Below, piece after piece: positions 8,105 through 20,200 of a stretch of DNA of 64,000 nucleotides. Both the position numbers and the translations under genes were made by a program. This stretch comes from Setoptus koraiensis. Its lineage: Eukaryota; Animalia; Arthropoda. Location of the stretch: positions 24,118,001 to 24,182,000 of the forward strand of contig CM106586.1 in the NCBI GenBank assembly GCA_048013815.1, given 5' to 3'. Every line of letters starts with the position of its first letter. Position 1 is the first letter of the stretch. The notes below the pieces were generated by a model, which saw nothing but the letters and a program-made list of their open reading frames with translations, ran no database searches and had not been told where the DNA came from.

Positions 8105-11100
8105 GGTTGAGGTCAGGGGGATCGAGAACATGGCTATCATAATCCGTCATGAGCTTGTATATATAAATTCTCTTGTATACATGTGTAGATATATTGGTTT
8201 GCCTGATGTATATAAGGTGTGCATGGATGATTTGACTGTGGGTGTATGTTGTGGGTAGTTCAATTTGTTTGTTTGTTTGTTATTGTGTTGTTTTTGTGTG
8301 TACAATGTATTTTTTGTTTTTTTAGATAGTTTATAATTAAATCTCAGCTGAAATTGTGATAACCTAAACAGAAACGGGGGCAACATCTATAAATTTTCTA
8401 GCCACAAACTTAAGAGCTTCATCTAGTAAGAGTACAGGTACTGAAATTTTGAGTACGGTCCACCATTCGAACACATTCAATGGGCATACGCTGAAAACTG
8501 TAGATAGTATATCGACATATAATACGACAAAATGAAGAGTCATTGATAAAGCGACGGCTGATATAAGCCAGATGTTTGTCCATGGTGGCATCAACAATAA
8601 TGATTGATTCTCTGACAGGCTGTTGAAGGCATTTAACATCTCAATTGTGACTAATACAGATAATGCCATTGTCATAGGATGTGGATCGTGGAATACTGAA
8701 CAATCAACACCGGAAAACTCCTCTGGTAGAGCTAGACAAGATAAATGATGAGTTAATTGATAATAGTTAAGTGCTGGTCCCGTAGGTGAATACATGTACC
8801 ACCATGCAGCGGCGCCCACTGTAGCACAACCTACATAAACTCCAACGGCCAAGTAACGGAAAAATAACCAACCAGTAATAAGTGGTTCATTAGCGCGTCT
8901 TGGTGGTCTTTGCATAATATCTAGATCAGGTGGATTGAATCCAAGTGCAGTAGCTGGTAAACCGTCAGTAACTAGATTTACCCACAACAACTGGACTGGA
9001 ATTAATGCTTCAGGTAGACCTAGAGCTGCTGTTACAAAAATACTAACAACTTCACCAATGTTAGATGAGATTAAATATCTGATGAATTGTTTCATGTTGT
9101 TGTAAATTGCACGACCCTCTTCTACGGCTGAAACAATAGACGAAAAGTTATCATCAGCTAGTACCATTTCTGCGGCAGATTTTGCAACAGCAGTACCTGA
9201 ACCCATAGCGATACCAATTTCGGCCTTTTTCAACGCTGGTGCATCATTAACACCATCACCAGTCATGGCAGATATTTCACCATCAGCTTGTAAGAATTCA
9301 ATAATTTTTGATTTGTGTGACGGCTCAACACGCGAAAATAATCTAGACTTGCGACAAGCCTCTCGTTGTTGATATACAGGCAAATCGTCAAATTCACGTC
9401 CTGAGTATGACATTCCGGTGGTATCTTCATTCTCTCCAAACACTCCAATTCGTCTACAAATTGCCTCGGCAGTGGCTTTGTTGTCTCCTGTAATAACAAT
9501 AACACGAATACCGGCAGCACGACATCGCCTAATTGAGTCAGCAACTTCTGTACGTGGTGGATCTAGCATACCAACGCAGCCAACAAATGTAAGATTGTTC
9601 TCATAGTTGATGAATTTTGATGAATCACTCAAGTCCATCTCATCCATTCGAGGGGGATCATCAAGAGTAGCCAATGCTAGACAACGTAATGTGTCACGAC
9701 CTGTACCATAATTTCTTATAGTCTCTAATATTCTATTCTTAATGGGCGATGTCAATGGTACCTTTGTATTCTTCACTCTAACATGAGTACATCTGTCTAA
9801 AATGCTCTCTGGGGCTCCTTTACAAAATAGTCTAGTACCTGGACCGAGTCTGTTTTCAGGATTTTTTGGTGTACACAAAGCACTCATAGATTTACGATCT
9901 CGTGAGAATTCCAATGTACATTCCTTTCTCCATTGGCTCAAAACATGATGATTGACTGTTAGTGCAGCATCTCGTTTTGATAATGAGTTACGTGTACATT
10001 TCATTGGATTTAGTTTTTCGGCCAAAACAACAAGAGCTGTCTCAGTGGCCTCACCGACCTTCTCAAATACTTGCTTGTATTCATTGAAATCAATGCTTGA
10101 ATCATTACATAATACACATAATGTTGTTAATTCGTGTAGGGCATCATATTGACTAGTGTCGGCCGCTTGTCCGCCAATGAAACATTCTCCAATTGGCTCA
10201 TAAGTGCTACCTGTCATGGTGAATTCGTGCAAGGCTACATCGCTTCCGCTGGCTCGGTTCATTACAAATAGTCTGCTTACGGACATTTGATTAGTAGTAA
10301 GTGTTCCTGTTTTATCTGAGCAAATAACAGATGTACAACCCAATGTCTCTACCGATGGCAAAGATCTTACAATGGCATTCTTGCGTGCCATACGTCTAGT
10401 ACCCAATGCAAGACATGTCGTAATGACGGCTGGCAGACCTTCTGGTATAGCGGCAACAGCTAATGCGACAGCAATTTTAAAATAATAAATGGCACCCTTT
10501 AGCCATGAGCCACCGTGAGCTGGATCATTAAAATGTCCAATATTAATTGCCCAAACTGCAACACAGATCACAGATATAACTTTTGACAATTGTTCACCGA
10601 ATTCGTCTAATTTAATTTGCAATGGCGTTTTTACTTCCTCTGTTTCTGTCATCTCTTTACGAATTTTACCAATTTCCGTTGATAAGCCTGTGCCAATGAC
10701 AATACCGCACGCTTTGCCGGCAGCAACATTTGTTCCCGAAAATAGTATATTCTTTTTATCTTGATTGACGGCTCTAGGATCTGGCACAGTATCACAATGT
10801 TTAATGACTGAAACGGACTCACCAGTCAATATAGACTGATCAATACGTAAAGTGGTCGAGTGTATCTTAATCAGGCGTATATCGGCCGGTACCTTGTCGC
10901 CAATGGACACTTCAACAATGTCACCAGGCACAATTTCTCTCGCTCTGATTTGTTGAACACCGTGCTTATTTTTCCTGATGACCTTGCCCATTTCTGGCTC
11001 ATACTCTTTAAGAGCCTCAATGGCATCTTCGGCATTTTTCTCTTGCCAAATACCAACAACAGCATTGGCTATCAATATTAATAATATGACAAACGGTTCA

Positions 11101-11434
11101 ACGAAGGCCGTTATAGAGTCCTCGTTTTCTTCAAAAAATGCTAATACAAATGATATAATGGCTGCTAATAATAATATTTTAACTAATAAATCATCAAACT
11201 GGGCCAAGATGAGCTGCCATAATGGTTTGCCCTGTTCGGCGGGCAATTCGTTGGGTCCGTACTTGTCTTGTAGCTTTTTAACATGTTCCTCGGACAAACC
11301 AAATTCGGGGTCCGAGTTGAAGTATTCGGTAACCTCGCGCCACGGTTTTGTATGAGCGTTTTCCATTCTACACAAGCTCTCTAGCTCTCTCACTCTCGCT
11401 AATTAGTGTTGTATGTTTCCCTCTGTGATTTATT
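8105..11434 (-). repeat. Left arm of a 3,330-bp apparently perfect inverted repeat
   Basis: Position x pairs with 28305-x. The identical 1009-aa ORF, identical shadow ORFs in other frames and identical 3' non-coding homopolymers occur in both arms. Identity ends at GACCTCAACC (20200/8105) and AATAAATCAC (16871/11434). Confidence 0.93.
8364..11366 (-). CDS. SERCA: Sarco/endoplasmic reticulum Ca2+-ATPase (P2A-type), copy A, intronless, 1000 aa
   Basis: [17 protein letters not shown] phosphorylation site, KGAPE, TGDGVND. True ATG (MENAHTK) at 11366; the ORF-track start at 11393 is a GTG. Confidence 0.97.
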
Positions 11435-19800: not shown

Positions 19801-20200
19801 TCTACAGTTTTCAGCGTATGCCCATTGAATGTGTTCGAATGGTGGACCGTACTCAAAATTTCAGTACCTGTACTCTTACTAGATGAAGCTCTTAAGTTTG
19901 TGGCTAGAAAATTTATAGATGTTGCCCCCGTTTCTGTTTAGGTTATCACAATTTCAGCTGAGATTTAATTATAAACTATCTAAAAAAACAAAAAATACAT
20001 TGTACACACAAAAACAACACAATAACAAACAAACAAACAAATTGAACTACCCACAACATACACCCACAGTCAAATCATCCATGCACACCTTATATACATC
20101 AGGCAAACCAATATATCTACACATGTATACAAGAGAATTTATATATACAAGCTCATGACGGATTATGATAGCCATGTTCTCGATCCCCCTGACCTCAACC
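16871..20200 (+). repeat. Right arm of the 3,330-bp apparently perfect inverted repeat
   Basis: Reverse complement of 8105-11434. Confidence 0.93.
16939..19941 (+). CDS. SERCA: Sarco/endoplasmic reticulum Ca2+-ATPase (P2A-type), copy B, intronless, 1000 aa
   Basis: Protein identical to copy A; ATG at 16939. Confidence 0.97.

What the first reader, a model, noticed from the sequence alone, without database searches (positions are those of the whole stretch)
8105..20200. SERCA gene palindrome: identical 3.33-kb arms inside an older, diverged inverted duplication
Two full-length SERCA genes face away from each other across a unique 5.4-kb spacer. I found no difference over 3,330 bp covering the CDS, 68 nt upstream of the ATG and 259 nt after the stop. 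Homologous sequence just outside differs on both ends (several percent substitutions distally, large indels proximally), with sharp boundaries. That is the expected signature of arm-to-arm gene conversion, as known for sex-chromosome palindromes, here applied to a Ca2+ pump that is single-copy in most invertebrates. It would give one protein, double dosage and two independent promoters.
Basis: partly seen in the sequence, partly recalled or inferred. Interest (0 to 1): 0.8.

Follow-up and report, generated by a model that had tools for sequence, protein, structure and literature searches.

The report
SERCA gene palindrome in gall mite
A gall-mite-type genome carries two mirror-image, base-for-base identical copies of its calcium-pump (SERCA) gene inside an older, decayed inverted duplication; this is most likely one copy overwriting the other (gene conversion), a known process and one of several such cases in this genome.

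Summary
Window 8105-11434 and 16871-20200 are a 3,330-bp inverted repeat with no differences, around a unique 5,436-bp spacer. Each arm holds an intact, intronless 1,000-aa SERCA gene, and the two genes lie head-to-head.

Just outside the arms, homologous DNA is only about 92% identical and is broken by indels. At that divergence about 62 differences are expected at silent and UTR sites, and none is seen (P about 1e-28).

Five related eriophyoid mites have a single SERCA(+) between TXNL1/PITH(-) and Dscam(-). The right copy is therefore ancestral, and the left copy is a lineage-specific inverted duplicate.

The best reading is non-allelic gene conversion, or equivalent re-copying, across the longest uninterrupted homology block, stopped on both sides by indels.

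The genome is probably Setoptus koraiensis, a PacBio CLR/Flye/NextPolish assembly of pooled mites. Perfect identity could be slightly flattered by polishing, but the duplication itself cannot be an artefact of that kind.

Double dosage and two promoters are untested. Only about 68-110 nt of upstream DNA is shared.

The scan has found similar homogenised palindromes elsewhere in this genome, and I re-verified two of them.

Verdict: a sound but fairly ordinary new member of a known kind.

The parts
5479..6588 (-). Left unique neighbour: thioredoxin-like protein 1 (TXNL1). The PITH-domain ORF is 5479-6141, with conserved thioredoxin-exon blocks at about 6258-6588.
   Evidence: Pfam PITH E=1.8e-49. 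tblastx blocks are conserved with L008 and L012. Homologues are named thioredoxin-like protein 1.
7757..8087 (.). Distal diverged flank of the left copy (D'), homologous in inverted orientation to 21167-21520.
   Evidence: 92.3% identity, 18 mismatches and 2 gaps per 300 columns. Only two copies exist in the genome.
8088..8104 (.). 17-bp filler in the left copy, at the place where the right copy has 966 bp.
   Evidence: Alignment.
8105..11434 (.). Left arm, 3,330 bp, identical to the reverse complement of the right arm.
8364..11366 (-). SERCA-L coding sequence (ATG at 11366, stop at 8364-8366). It is intronless, 1,000 aa, and is the derived inverted copy.
   Evidence: ORF. Full Pfam P-type ATPase domain set. 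1,614 bits to solved SERCA2. 100% identical to SERCA-R.
11435..11478 (.). Proximal decayed homology of the left copy (about 69-112 nt upstream of the gene), with indels relative to 16773-16870.
11479..16772 (.). Unique non-coding spacer core. It has no ORF over 89 aa, no Rfam family and no repeat family, only GT/AGC microsatellites. It must hold whatever copy-specific promoters exist for the two head-to-head genes.
11489..11553 (+). Short motif plus (AAC)n microsatellite, conserved with the end of sister-species contig L035 and colinear with TXNL1. It marks the insertion point of the inverted copy. This is tentative.
   Evidence: blastn 75-77% over 57-65 nt, E=3e-5 to 9e-6.
16773..16870 (.). 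Proximal decayed homology of the right copy.
16871..20200 (.). Right arm, 3,330 bp.
16939..19941 (+). SERCA-R coding sequence. This copy sits in the ancestral position and orientation.
   Evidence: Synteny TXNL1(-) / SERCA(+) / Dscam(-) in L008, L009, L012, L036 and L007.
20201..21166 (+). Segment present only beside the right arm. It contains a weak two-piece IFT20-like reading (20389-20538 and 20551-20922).
   Evidence: Alignment. Pfam IFT20 scores are 21.7 and 18.2 bits, both below the 27-bit cut-off.
21167..21520 (.). Distal diverged flank of the right copy (D), ending about 80-200 bp from the 3' end of the Dscam-like gene.
   Evidence: Dscam-like conservation from 23821 onward.

Best explanation
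After this mite lineage split from its nearest sampled relatives, a segment of about 3.8-4.75 kb was copied in inverted orientation. The segment held SERCA with about 110-165 nt upstream and up to about 1.6 kb downstream. The copy landed between TXNL1 and SERCA and created a head-to-head gene palindrome. The edges then decayed. A 966-versus-17-bp indel cut the distal 330 bp off from the rest, microsatellite indels broke the proximal end, and the isolated distal piece accumulated about 6% substitutions. The 3.33-kb block of uninterrupted homology between those indels has been homogenised by intrachromosomal non-allelic gene conversion between the inverted arms. This took one recent tract or repeated tracts, each ending where homology is interrupted. 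The result is two identical SERCA genes with identical UTR-proximal sequence. The anatomy, the divergence contrast, the polarity (right copy ancestral) and the uniqueness in the genome are shown. The conversion mechanism, the way the duplication arose (template switching or a staggered-break micro-inversion), and expression of both copies are inferred.
For: The arms are 100% identical over 3,330 bp. Flanking homology is 92.3% identical. About 62 differences are expected at the 688 synonymous plus 327 UTR sites and none is seen, log10 P = -27.8; the 95% upper bound on arm divergence is 0.09%. Both identity boundaries coincide with indels. Identity at silent sites cannot be due to protein-level selection: the same gene shows dS = 0.43 and dN = 0.006 against the sister species. 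Only two SERCA copies exist in the genome, and flank and spacer are single-locus, so this is not a transposable-element family. Relatives L008/L009, L012, L036 and L007 have one SERCA(+) between PITH(-) and Dscam(-). Sister contig L035 runs 3.4 kb from TXNL1 without meeting SERCA. The assembly does keep paralogue differences next to and within inverted repeats: the 92% flank here, and a 99% XRN1 repeat elsewhere. Two other kb-scale homogenised palindromes in the same chromosome were re-verified.
Against: No read-level data were available. The assembly is probably Flye on PacBio CLR reads with short-read polishing of a pool of at least 100,000 wild mites, and that pipeline could erase a few true arm differences. 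No orthologous palindrome was found in another species, so concerted evolution was not shown phylogenetically. There is no GC-biased-conversion signal: GC3 is 0.316, the lowest of seven orthologues. A single recent re-duplication over an old copy would leave the same pattern. A 3.3-kb tract is long for one conversion event.
Confidence: 0.68

Rival explanations
1. Two-step duplication without ongoing conversion. An old inverted copy existed, leaving the 92% flank, and a single very recent event re-copied the 3.33-kb SERCA block over it. The identity then reflects youth, not recurrent homogenisation.
For: Zero differences fit one very recent event equally well. There is no GC-bias footprint of long-term conversion. 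The duplication is not seen in any relative, so it may be young overall.
Against: Mechanistically this is itself one long non-reciprocal copying event between the arms. It needs both end points to fall exactly at pre-existing indels, which homology-dependent conversion explains naturally. Several other palindromes in this genome show the same pattern of identical core and decayed edges.
Confidence: 0.14
2. The duplication is real but the perfect identity is partly an assembly or polishing artefact. The true arms differ at a low level, and multi-mapped short reads or a collapsed repeat-graph edge gave both copies one consensus.
For: The probable source assembly used CLR reads, Flye 2.6 and two rounds of NextPolish on pooled wild mites with about 1.1% heterozygosity.
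Against: Differences begin immediately outside the arms, and other inverted repeats in the assembly are kept at 99%, 96% and 92%. A 3.3-kb arm is shorter than typical CLR reads at about 496x depth, so most reads are anchored in unique flanks. Even a few hidden differences would leave the arms tens of times more alike than the flanks.
Confidence: 0.12
3. The whole left copy is a mis-assembly (chimeric join, haplotype mix-up or inversion polymorphism), and the mite has one SERCA.
For: The sample was pooled and polymorphic, and the assembly came from noisy long reads. No independent assembly of the species could be found.
Against: The left copy has its own 92%-diverged flank, its own 17-bp filler and its own indel pattern. 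That is far beyond allelic divergence, and a fold-back or haplotig artefact would not produce it. The window is gap-free. Both outer flanks match ancestral synteny. A simple inversion polymorphism does not predict the observed junctions.
Confidence: 0.05

Closest known systems
Primate and mouse sex-chromosome palindromes (human Y P1-P8, X palindromes) maintained by arm-to-arm gene conversion (for example PMC8600007, PMC8327919, bioRxiv 10.1101/800185; listed)
   Same: Inverted arms over 99.9% identical around a unique spacer. Intact genes in both arms. Arm identity far exceeds what the age of the duplication predicts.
   Different: This one is about 12 kb in total rather than 10 kb to 3 Mb. 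It lies in a mite whose assembly has only two chromosomes; on general knowledge, not tested here, eriophyoid mites are haplodiploid and have no differentiated sex chromosomes. It carries a housekeeping Ca2+ pump rather than testis genes. No orthologous palindrome was found in relatives, and no GC-bias signal is present.
Small palindromic gene pairs with concerted evolution in invertebrates: Drosophila Hsp70Aa/Ab divergent pair, C. elegans hsp-16 perfect inverted repeat (recalled from general knowledge, not tested here)
   Same: A kb-scale head-to-head inverted duplicate of a single intron-poor gene, with identical or near-identical coding sequence kept alike by conversion.
   Different: A different gene family. 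The spacer here is long (5.4 kb) and the shared upstream region is very short, so a shared bidirectional promoter is unlikely.
Inverted duplications at inversion breakpoints (staggered-break model, Drosophila; for example PMC3355041 and PMC7584159) and palindromes reported in other small invertebrate genomes (Folsomia candida PMC5490193; review PMC7953838)
   Same: A local rearrangement that leaves inverted copies of a gene-sized segment at the two ends of a short intervening segment.
   Different: Whether the spacer is inverted relative to the ancestor could not be established. The one conserved marker (11489-11553) is not inverted relative to TXNL1, which argues against a simple staggered-break inversion.
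Other homogenised inverted duplications in this same genome noted by the scan (V-ATPase c, XRN1, eIF1/YTHDF, MRPL13/mTERF3 and others)
   Same: The same architecture: an identical core, decayed edges and a spacer of a few kb. Two were re-verified here.
   Different: The SERCA case has the longest perfect arm among those I saw (3.33 kb) and contains a complete large gene.

Membership tests
SERCA (P2A-type Ca2+-ATPase) | P-type ATPase domain architecture (Cation_ATPase_N, E1-E2_ATPase, Cation_ATPase, HAD hydrolase, Cation_ATPase_C) | tested here: met
   All five Pfam families score above their cut-offs.
SERCA (P2A-type Ca2+-ATPase) | Full-length, high-identity match to solved SERCA1a/SERCA2 rather than to SPCA, PMCA or Na,K-ATPase | tested here: met
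   1,614 bits to SERCA2 over residues 5-1005, against at most 507 bits for other pumps. Best named hits are mite SERCAs at 87-91% identity. Other P-type ATPases in the genome are at most 41% identical.
SERCA (P2A-type Ca2+-ATPase) | Phosphorylation motif DKTGT, hinge [11 protein letters not shown], and the Ca2+-site residue contexts ([23 protein letters not shown]) | tested here: met
   All are present and aligned to SERCA2 in the residue-level alignment.
SERCA (P2A-type Ca2+-ATPase) | Ca2+ transport activity and ER localisation | not testable with these tools
Strong purifying selection (dN/dS about 0.013 against the sister species) is consistent with function.
Gene-conversion-maintained palindrome | Inverted arms at least 99.9% identical, separated by a unique spacer | tested here: met
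   3,330 bp at 100% identity with a 5,436-bp unique spacer.
Gene-conversion-maintained palindrome | The duplication is older than the arm identity implies (diverged homologous sequence contiguous with the arms) | tested here: met
   Flank divergence K is about 0.064, against 0 differences in 3,330 bp of arm, log10 P = -27.8 on neutral sites. Indels sit at both boundaries.
Gene-conversion-maintained palindrome | An orthologous palindrome in related species, with arms more alike within than between species | tested here: inconclusive
   Five relatives show a single SERCA at this locus. The sister species at dS 0.43 has no SERCA beside TXNL1 within 3.4 kb. The duplication looks lineage-specific, so the test cannot be applied.
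Gene-conversion-maintained palindrome | Read-level proof of two copies (spanning molecules, two-copy depth, no hidden copy-specific variants) | not testable with these tools
   No reads were available. The exact-protein look-up and the exact-DNA metagenome scan found no independent assembly.
Gene-conversion-maintained palindrome | GC-biased conversion footprint (typical but not obligatory) | tested here: not met
   GC3 is 0.316, the lowest among seven eriophyoid orthologues, which range from 0.36 to 0.51.
Inverted duplication made by a staggered-break micro-inversion | The intervening segment is inverted relative to the ancestral order | tested here: inconclusive
   The only conserved marker in the spacer (11489-11553) keeps the ancestral orientation relative to TXNL1. 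The rest of the spacer has no alignable counterpart in relatives.

The most novel reading that the evidence does not exclude
The SERCA palindrome is one instance of a genome-wide habit. In this streamlined eriophyoid genome, frequent local inverted duplications plus efficient arm-to-arm conversion would systematically create and preserve identical spare copies of essential genes (SERCA, V-ATPase c, XRN1 and others). The arms could also flip the promoter-bearing spacers. On this reading palindromes act as a general route to dosage gain or mutational back-up in an animal that (from general knowledge, not tested here) has haploid males.
Probability: 0.15. Interest if true: 0.55.

Novelty: new member of a known kind. 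Interest (0 to 1): 0.3.

Why it matters
The locus is a clean, small, fully sequenced example of concerted evolution in an autosomal gene palindrome outside vertebrate sex chromosomes. Homology breaks (indels) define where homogenisation stops, and comparison with relatives settles which copy is ancestral.

It also shows that an animal with one of the most reduced arthropod genomes still gains copies of a core Ca2+ pump that is single-copy in its relatives.

Together with the other palindromes in this assembly, it could serve to measure conversion rate, tract length and spacer inversion in mites. Taken alone it does not change any established view.

Tried and rejected
1. Transposable element or repeat family. 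Rejected: arm, flank and spacer are single-locus in the 48.7-Mb genome, apart from microsatellites.

2. Gene or structured RNA in the spacer. No ORF exceeds 89 aa, there is no Rfam family, and only GT/AGC microsatellites are present.

3. Hairpin-RNA reading. Not favoured: the two genes are head-to-head and transcribe outward, so no single transcript is expected to cover both arms.

4. GC-biased conversion signature. Not found.

5. Relaxed selection after duplication. Not seen: there are 9 aa differences from the sister species, split roughly evenly between lineages, and dN/dS is about 0.013.

6. Independent assembly of the same species. The exact-protein look-up and a 34-nt exact scan of the metagenome contigs both found nothing.

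7. Length coincidence. The 3,323-bp Logan contig L006 is nearly as long as the arm, but its ends lie in microsatellites at different positions (137 nt upstream and 183 nt downstream), so it says nothing about a palindrome in the sister species.

8. Conserved promoter blocks upstream of SERCA across species. None is alignable.

9. Whether the 966-bp right-only segment was deleted from the left copy or inserted on the right. Unresolved: no IFT20-like sequence lies beside SERCA in relatives, and the Pfam matches are below the cut-off. The 17-bp filler favours a deletion in the left copy.

10. Coordinates of other scan notes. My first fetch missed the two palindromes. The shifted fetch found them.
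Full report
OBSERVATION

The inverted repeat is exactly as described. Arms 8105-11434 and 16871-20200 are 3,330 nt long and 100% complementary, with 5,436 nt between them. A direct string comparison confirms identity, and the window has no N.

Each arm carries an uninterrupted ORF (8364-11393 on the minus strand, 16912-19941 on the plus strand). The conserved start is the ATG at 11366 / 16939, which gives a 1,000-aa protein. 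This leaves 68 nt of arm upstream of the ATG and 259 nt after the stop. The genes are head-to-head, so both 5' ends face the spacer.

WHAT THE GENE IS

- The protein has the complete P-type ATPase domain set.
- It aligns end to end with solved SERCA2 and SERCA1a at about 1,600 bits, against at most 507 bits for any other pump.
- [16 protein letters not shown] and the Ca2+-site contexts are all in place.
- The best named relatives are eriophyoid mites: Fragariocoptes setiger at 91% and Aceria tosichella at 87%.
- The genome has no third SERCA. Other P-type ATPases are at most 41% identical.

WHOSE GENOME

- The assembly has two pieces of 24,221,962 and 24,533,333 bp.
- The published chromosome-level assembly of the phytoptid mite Setoptus koraiensis has two chromosomes and a scaffold N50 of 24.53 Mb (PMC11920263). 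I take this as the probable source.
- It was made from at least 100,000 pooled wild mites with PacBio CLR reads (about 496x), Flye 2.6, one long-read and two NextPolish short-read polishing rounds, purge_dups and Hi-C. Heterozygosity was about 1.13%.
- The other two-chromosome eriophyoid assembly in the literature is 34.3 Mb and does not fit.

EDGES OF THE DUPLICATION

Distal side:
- Homology continues at about 7757-8087 versus 21520-21167, but at only 92.3% identity (18 mismatches and 2 gaps in 300 columns).
- This flank is separated from the arm by 17 bp on the left (8088-8104) and 966 bp on the right (20201-21166).
- The right-only segment holds a weak two-piece IFT20-like reading on the plus strand. 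Both pieces score below the Pfam cut-off.

Proximal side:
- Identity stops at 11434/16871.
- About 54 nt of microsatellite-type indels follow, then a block of about 30 bp that still matches (11450-11478 versus 16801-16773), then nothing.

The perfect tract is therefore the longest stretch of uninterrupted homology, bounded on both sides by indels. Flank, arm and spacer occur only here in the genome, so no transposable-element family is involved.

IS THE CONTRAST MORE THAN CHANCE?

- At the flank's raw divergence (p = 0.061, K = 0.064), about 62 differences are expected in the 688 synonymous plus 327 UTR sites of an arm. None is seen (log10 P = -27.8).
- The 95% upper bound on arm divergence is 0.09%.
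- Protein-level selection cannot explain this. The same gene differs from its nearest sampled orthologue (Logan contig L006, run SRR33593474) at dS = 0.43 but dN = 0.006.

POLARITY AND AGE

- In four relatives the order is PITH/TXNL1(-), 2-3 kb, a single SERCA(+). These are L008/L009 from two metagenomes, L012, L036, and L007, which is Fragariocoptes.
- In L008, L012 and L007 this is followed by a Dscam-like gene on the minus strand.
- SERCA-R therefore sits in the ancestral position and orientation, and SERCA-L is the derived inverted copy.
- Two more relatives (L010/L011 and L013) have different neighbours but also one SERCA.
- The sister species' TXNL1 contig (L035, 82% nucleotide identity to window 3555-6785) runs 3.4 kb beyond TXNL1 without any SERCA sequence. 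It ends in an (AAC)n microsatellite preceded by a motif that matches window 11489-11553, at the left end of the spacer and colinear with TXNL1.
- Tentatively, then, the inverted copy was inserted right beside that motif, and the sister species lacks it.
- Flank divergence (0.064) is about one seventh of the neutral divergence to the sister (0.43). The duplication, or at least the isolation of the flank from conversion, therefore post-dates that split.

MECHANISM (INFERRED)

1. An inverted duplication of about 3.8-4.75 kb arose by replication template switching or a related local rearrangement. A simple staggered-break inversion is not favoured, because the one conserved spacer marker is not inverted.
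2. The edges decayed: the 966/17-bp indel (the filler favours a deletion that removed the duplicated IFT20-like segment from the left copy), microsatellite indels proximally, and substitutions in the isolated 330 bp.
3. Non-allelic gene conversion between the inverted arms homogenised the remaining 3.33-kb block, with tracts ending at the heterologies.

The conversion left no GC-bias footprint: GC3 is 0.316, the lowest of seven orthologues. There is no sign of relaxed constraint either: of the 9 aa differences from the sister species, about half fall on each lineage.

ARTEFACT QUESTION

- A fold-back, haplotig or inversion-polymorphism artefact would not give the left copy its own 92% flank, filler and indel pattern. 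The window is gap-free, and both outer flanks match ancestral synteny. The duplication itself is very probably real.
- Perfect identity could be slightly flattered by short-read polishing of multi-mapped reads.
- Against that, the same assembly keeps differences immediately beside the arms. It also keeps other inverted repeats at 99%, 96% and 92%. A 3.3-kb arm is short relative to CLR reads at about 500x depth.
- Read-level proof was not possible. No independent assembly was found.

FUNCTION CLAIMS

- One protein from two genes follows from the sequence.
- Double dosage and two independent promoters are untested.
- The copies share only 68 nt upstream, plus a block of about 30 nt at -100 / -150. 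The 5.3-kb spacer core is unique and non-coding.
- No upstream block is alignable across species, so SERCA-L may be regulated differently or may be silent.
- Conversion from SERCA-R would keep SERCA-L's ORF intact even if it were silent. Intactness of the left copy is therefore not evidence of use.

CONTEXT IN THIS GENOME

- Earlier notes from the scan list several inverted duplications with homogenised cores in the same genome: V-ATPase c, XRN1, eIF1/YTHDF, MRPL13/mTERF3 and others.
- I re-checked two. C2:15451500-15461499 has arms of 1,661 plus 658 nt at 100% identity around a 3.5-kb spacer. C2:23132500-23142499 has 669-nt arms at 99% identity around 6.6 kb.
- A direct near-identical pair of another P-type ATPase gene lies on C1 (99.93% over at least 3,011 bp).
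- Another eriophyoid (L008) carries a 99.8% direct partial duplicate of the SERCA 3' end.
- Local duplication followed by homogenisation therefore looks like a recurrent theme. The SERCA case is not a one-off.

COMPARISON WITH KNOWN SYSTEMS AND VERDICT

- In how it works, this resembles the conversion-maintained palindromes of mammalian sex chromosomes (papers listed). From general knowledge, it also resembles small palindromic gene pairs such as Drosophila Hsp70Aa/Ab and C. elegans hsp-16.
- It meets the structural criteria: near-identical inverted arms, a unique spacer, and an age that exceeds the arm identity.
- It lacks the phylogenetic and read-level criteria.
- It is a new member of a known kind: a well-delimited, lineage-specific SERCA gene palindrome in an eriophyoid mite. 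It is sound, but of modest interest on its own.

Noticed in passing
L008:15137-15700 versus L008:12742-13305: Another eriophyoid mite (JGI metagenome 3300030504) carries a direct partial duplicate of the SERCA 3' end plus downstream DNA. It is at least 564 bp long, 99.8% identical, and lies about 2.1 kb downstream of the gene.
   Followed up: partly
G000 C1:18088327-18091337 and C1:18103990-18106999 (L031/L032): A direct, 99.93%-identical duplicate (at least 3,011 bp, cut off by the fetched end) of another P-type ATPase gene, with the copies 15.7 kb apart.
   Followed up: partly
L012:5702-6073, L036:7599-8021, L008:13068-13487, L010:13257-13820 (all minus strand): A small conserved ORF or terminal exon (motif VESPALSVDSGG...LLNVKQGYYADIYDRID) lies just downstream of SERCA in four relatives. 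It is absent from the window, and the genome has only a weak match at C1:91015-91182. It may be the cytoplasmic tail exon of the neighbouring Dscam-like gene, lost or moved in this lineage.
   Followed up: partly
L035:1773-2270; G000 C1:23502568-23503050: A Voldacs/ICln gene sits between TXNL1 and the SERCA side in the sister species, but lies on the other chromosome in this genome (78% aa identity). The TXNL1-SERCA interval is a rearrangement hot spot.
   Followed up: partly
G000 C2:15451500-15461499 (L033) and C2:23132500-23142499 (L034): Two further gene palindromes noted by the scan were re-verified. The first has arms of 1,661 plus 658 nt at 100% identity with a 3.5-kb spacer. The second has 669-nt arms at 99% identity with a 6.6-kb spacer.
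   Followed up: partly
window 20389-20538 and 20551-20922 (+): An IFT20-like reading in two pieces, with Pfam scores of 21.7 and 18.2 bits, each below the 27-bit cut-off. It lies only beside the right arm. No IFT20-like sequence is found beside SERCA in relatives.
   Followed up: partly
window 6258-6588: Conserved coding blocks upstream of the PITH ORF correspond to the thioredoxin domain of TXNL1. The gene therefore has at least one intron in this otherwise intron-poor genome.
   Followed up: no
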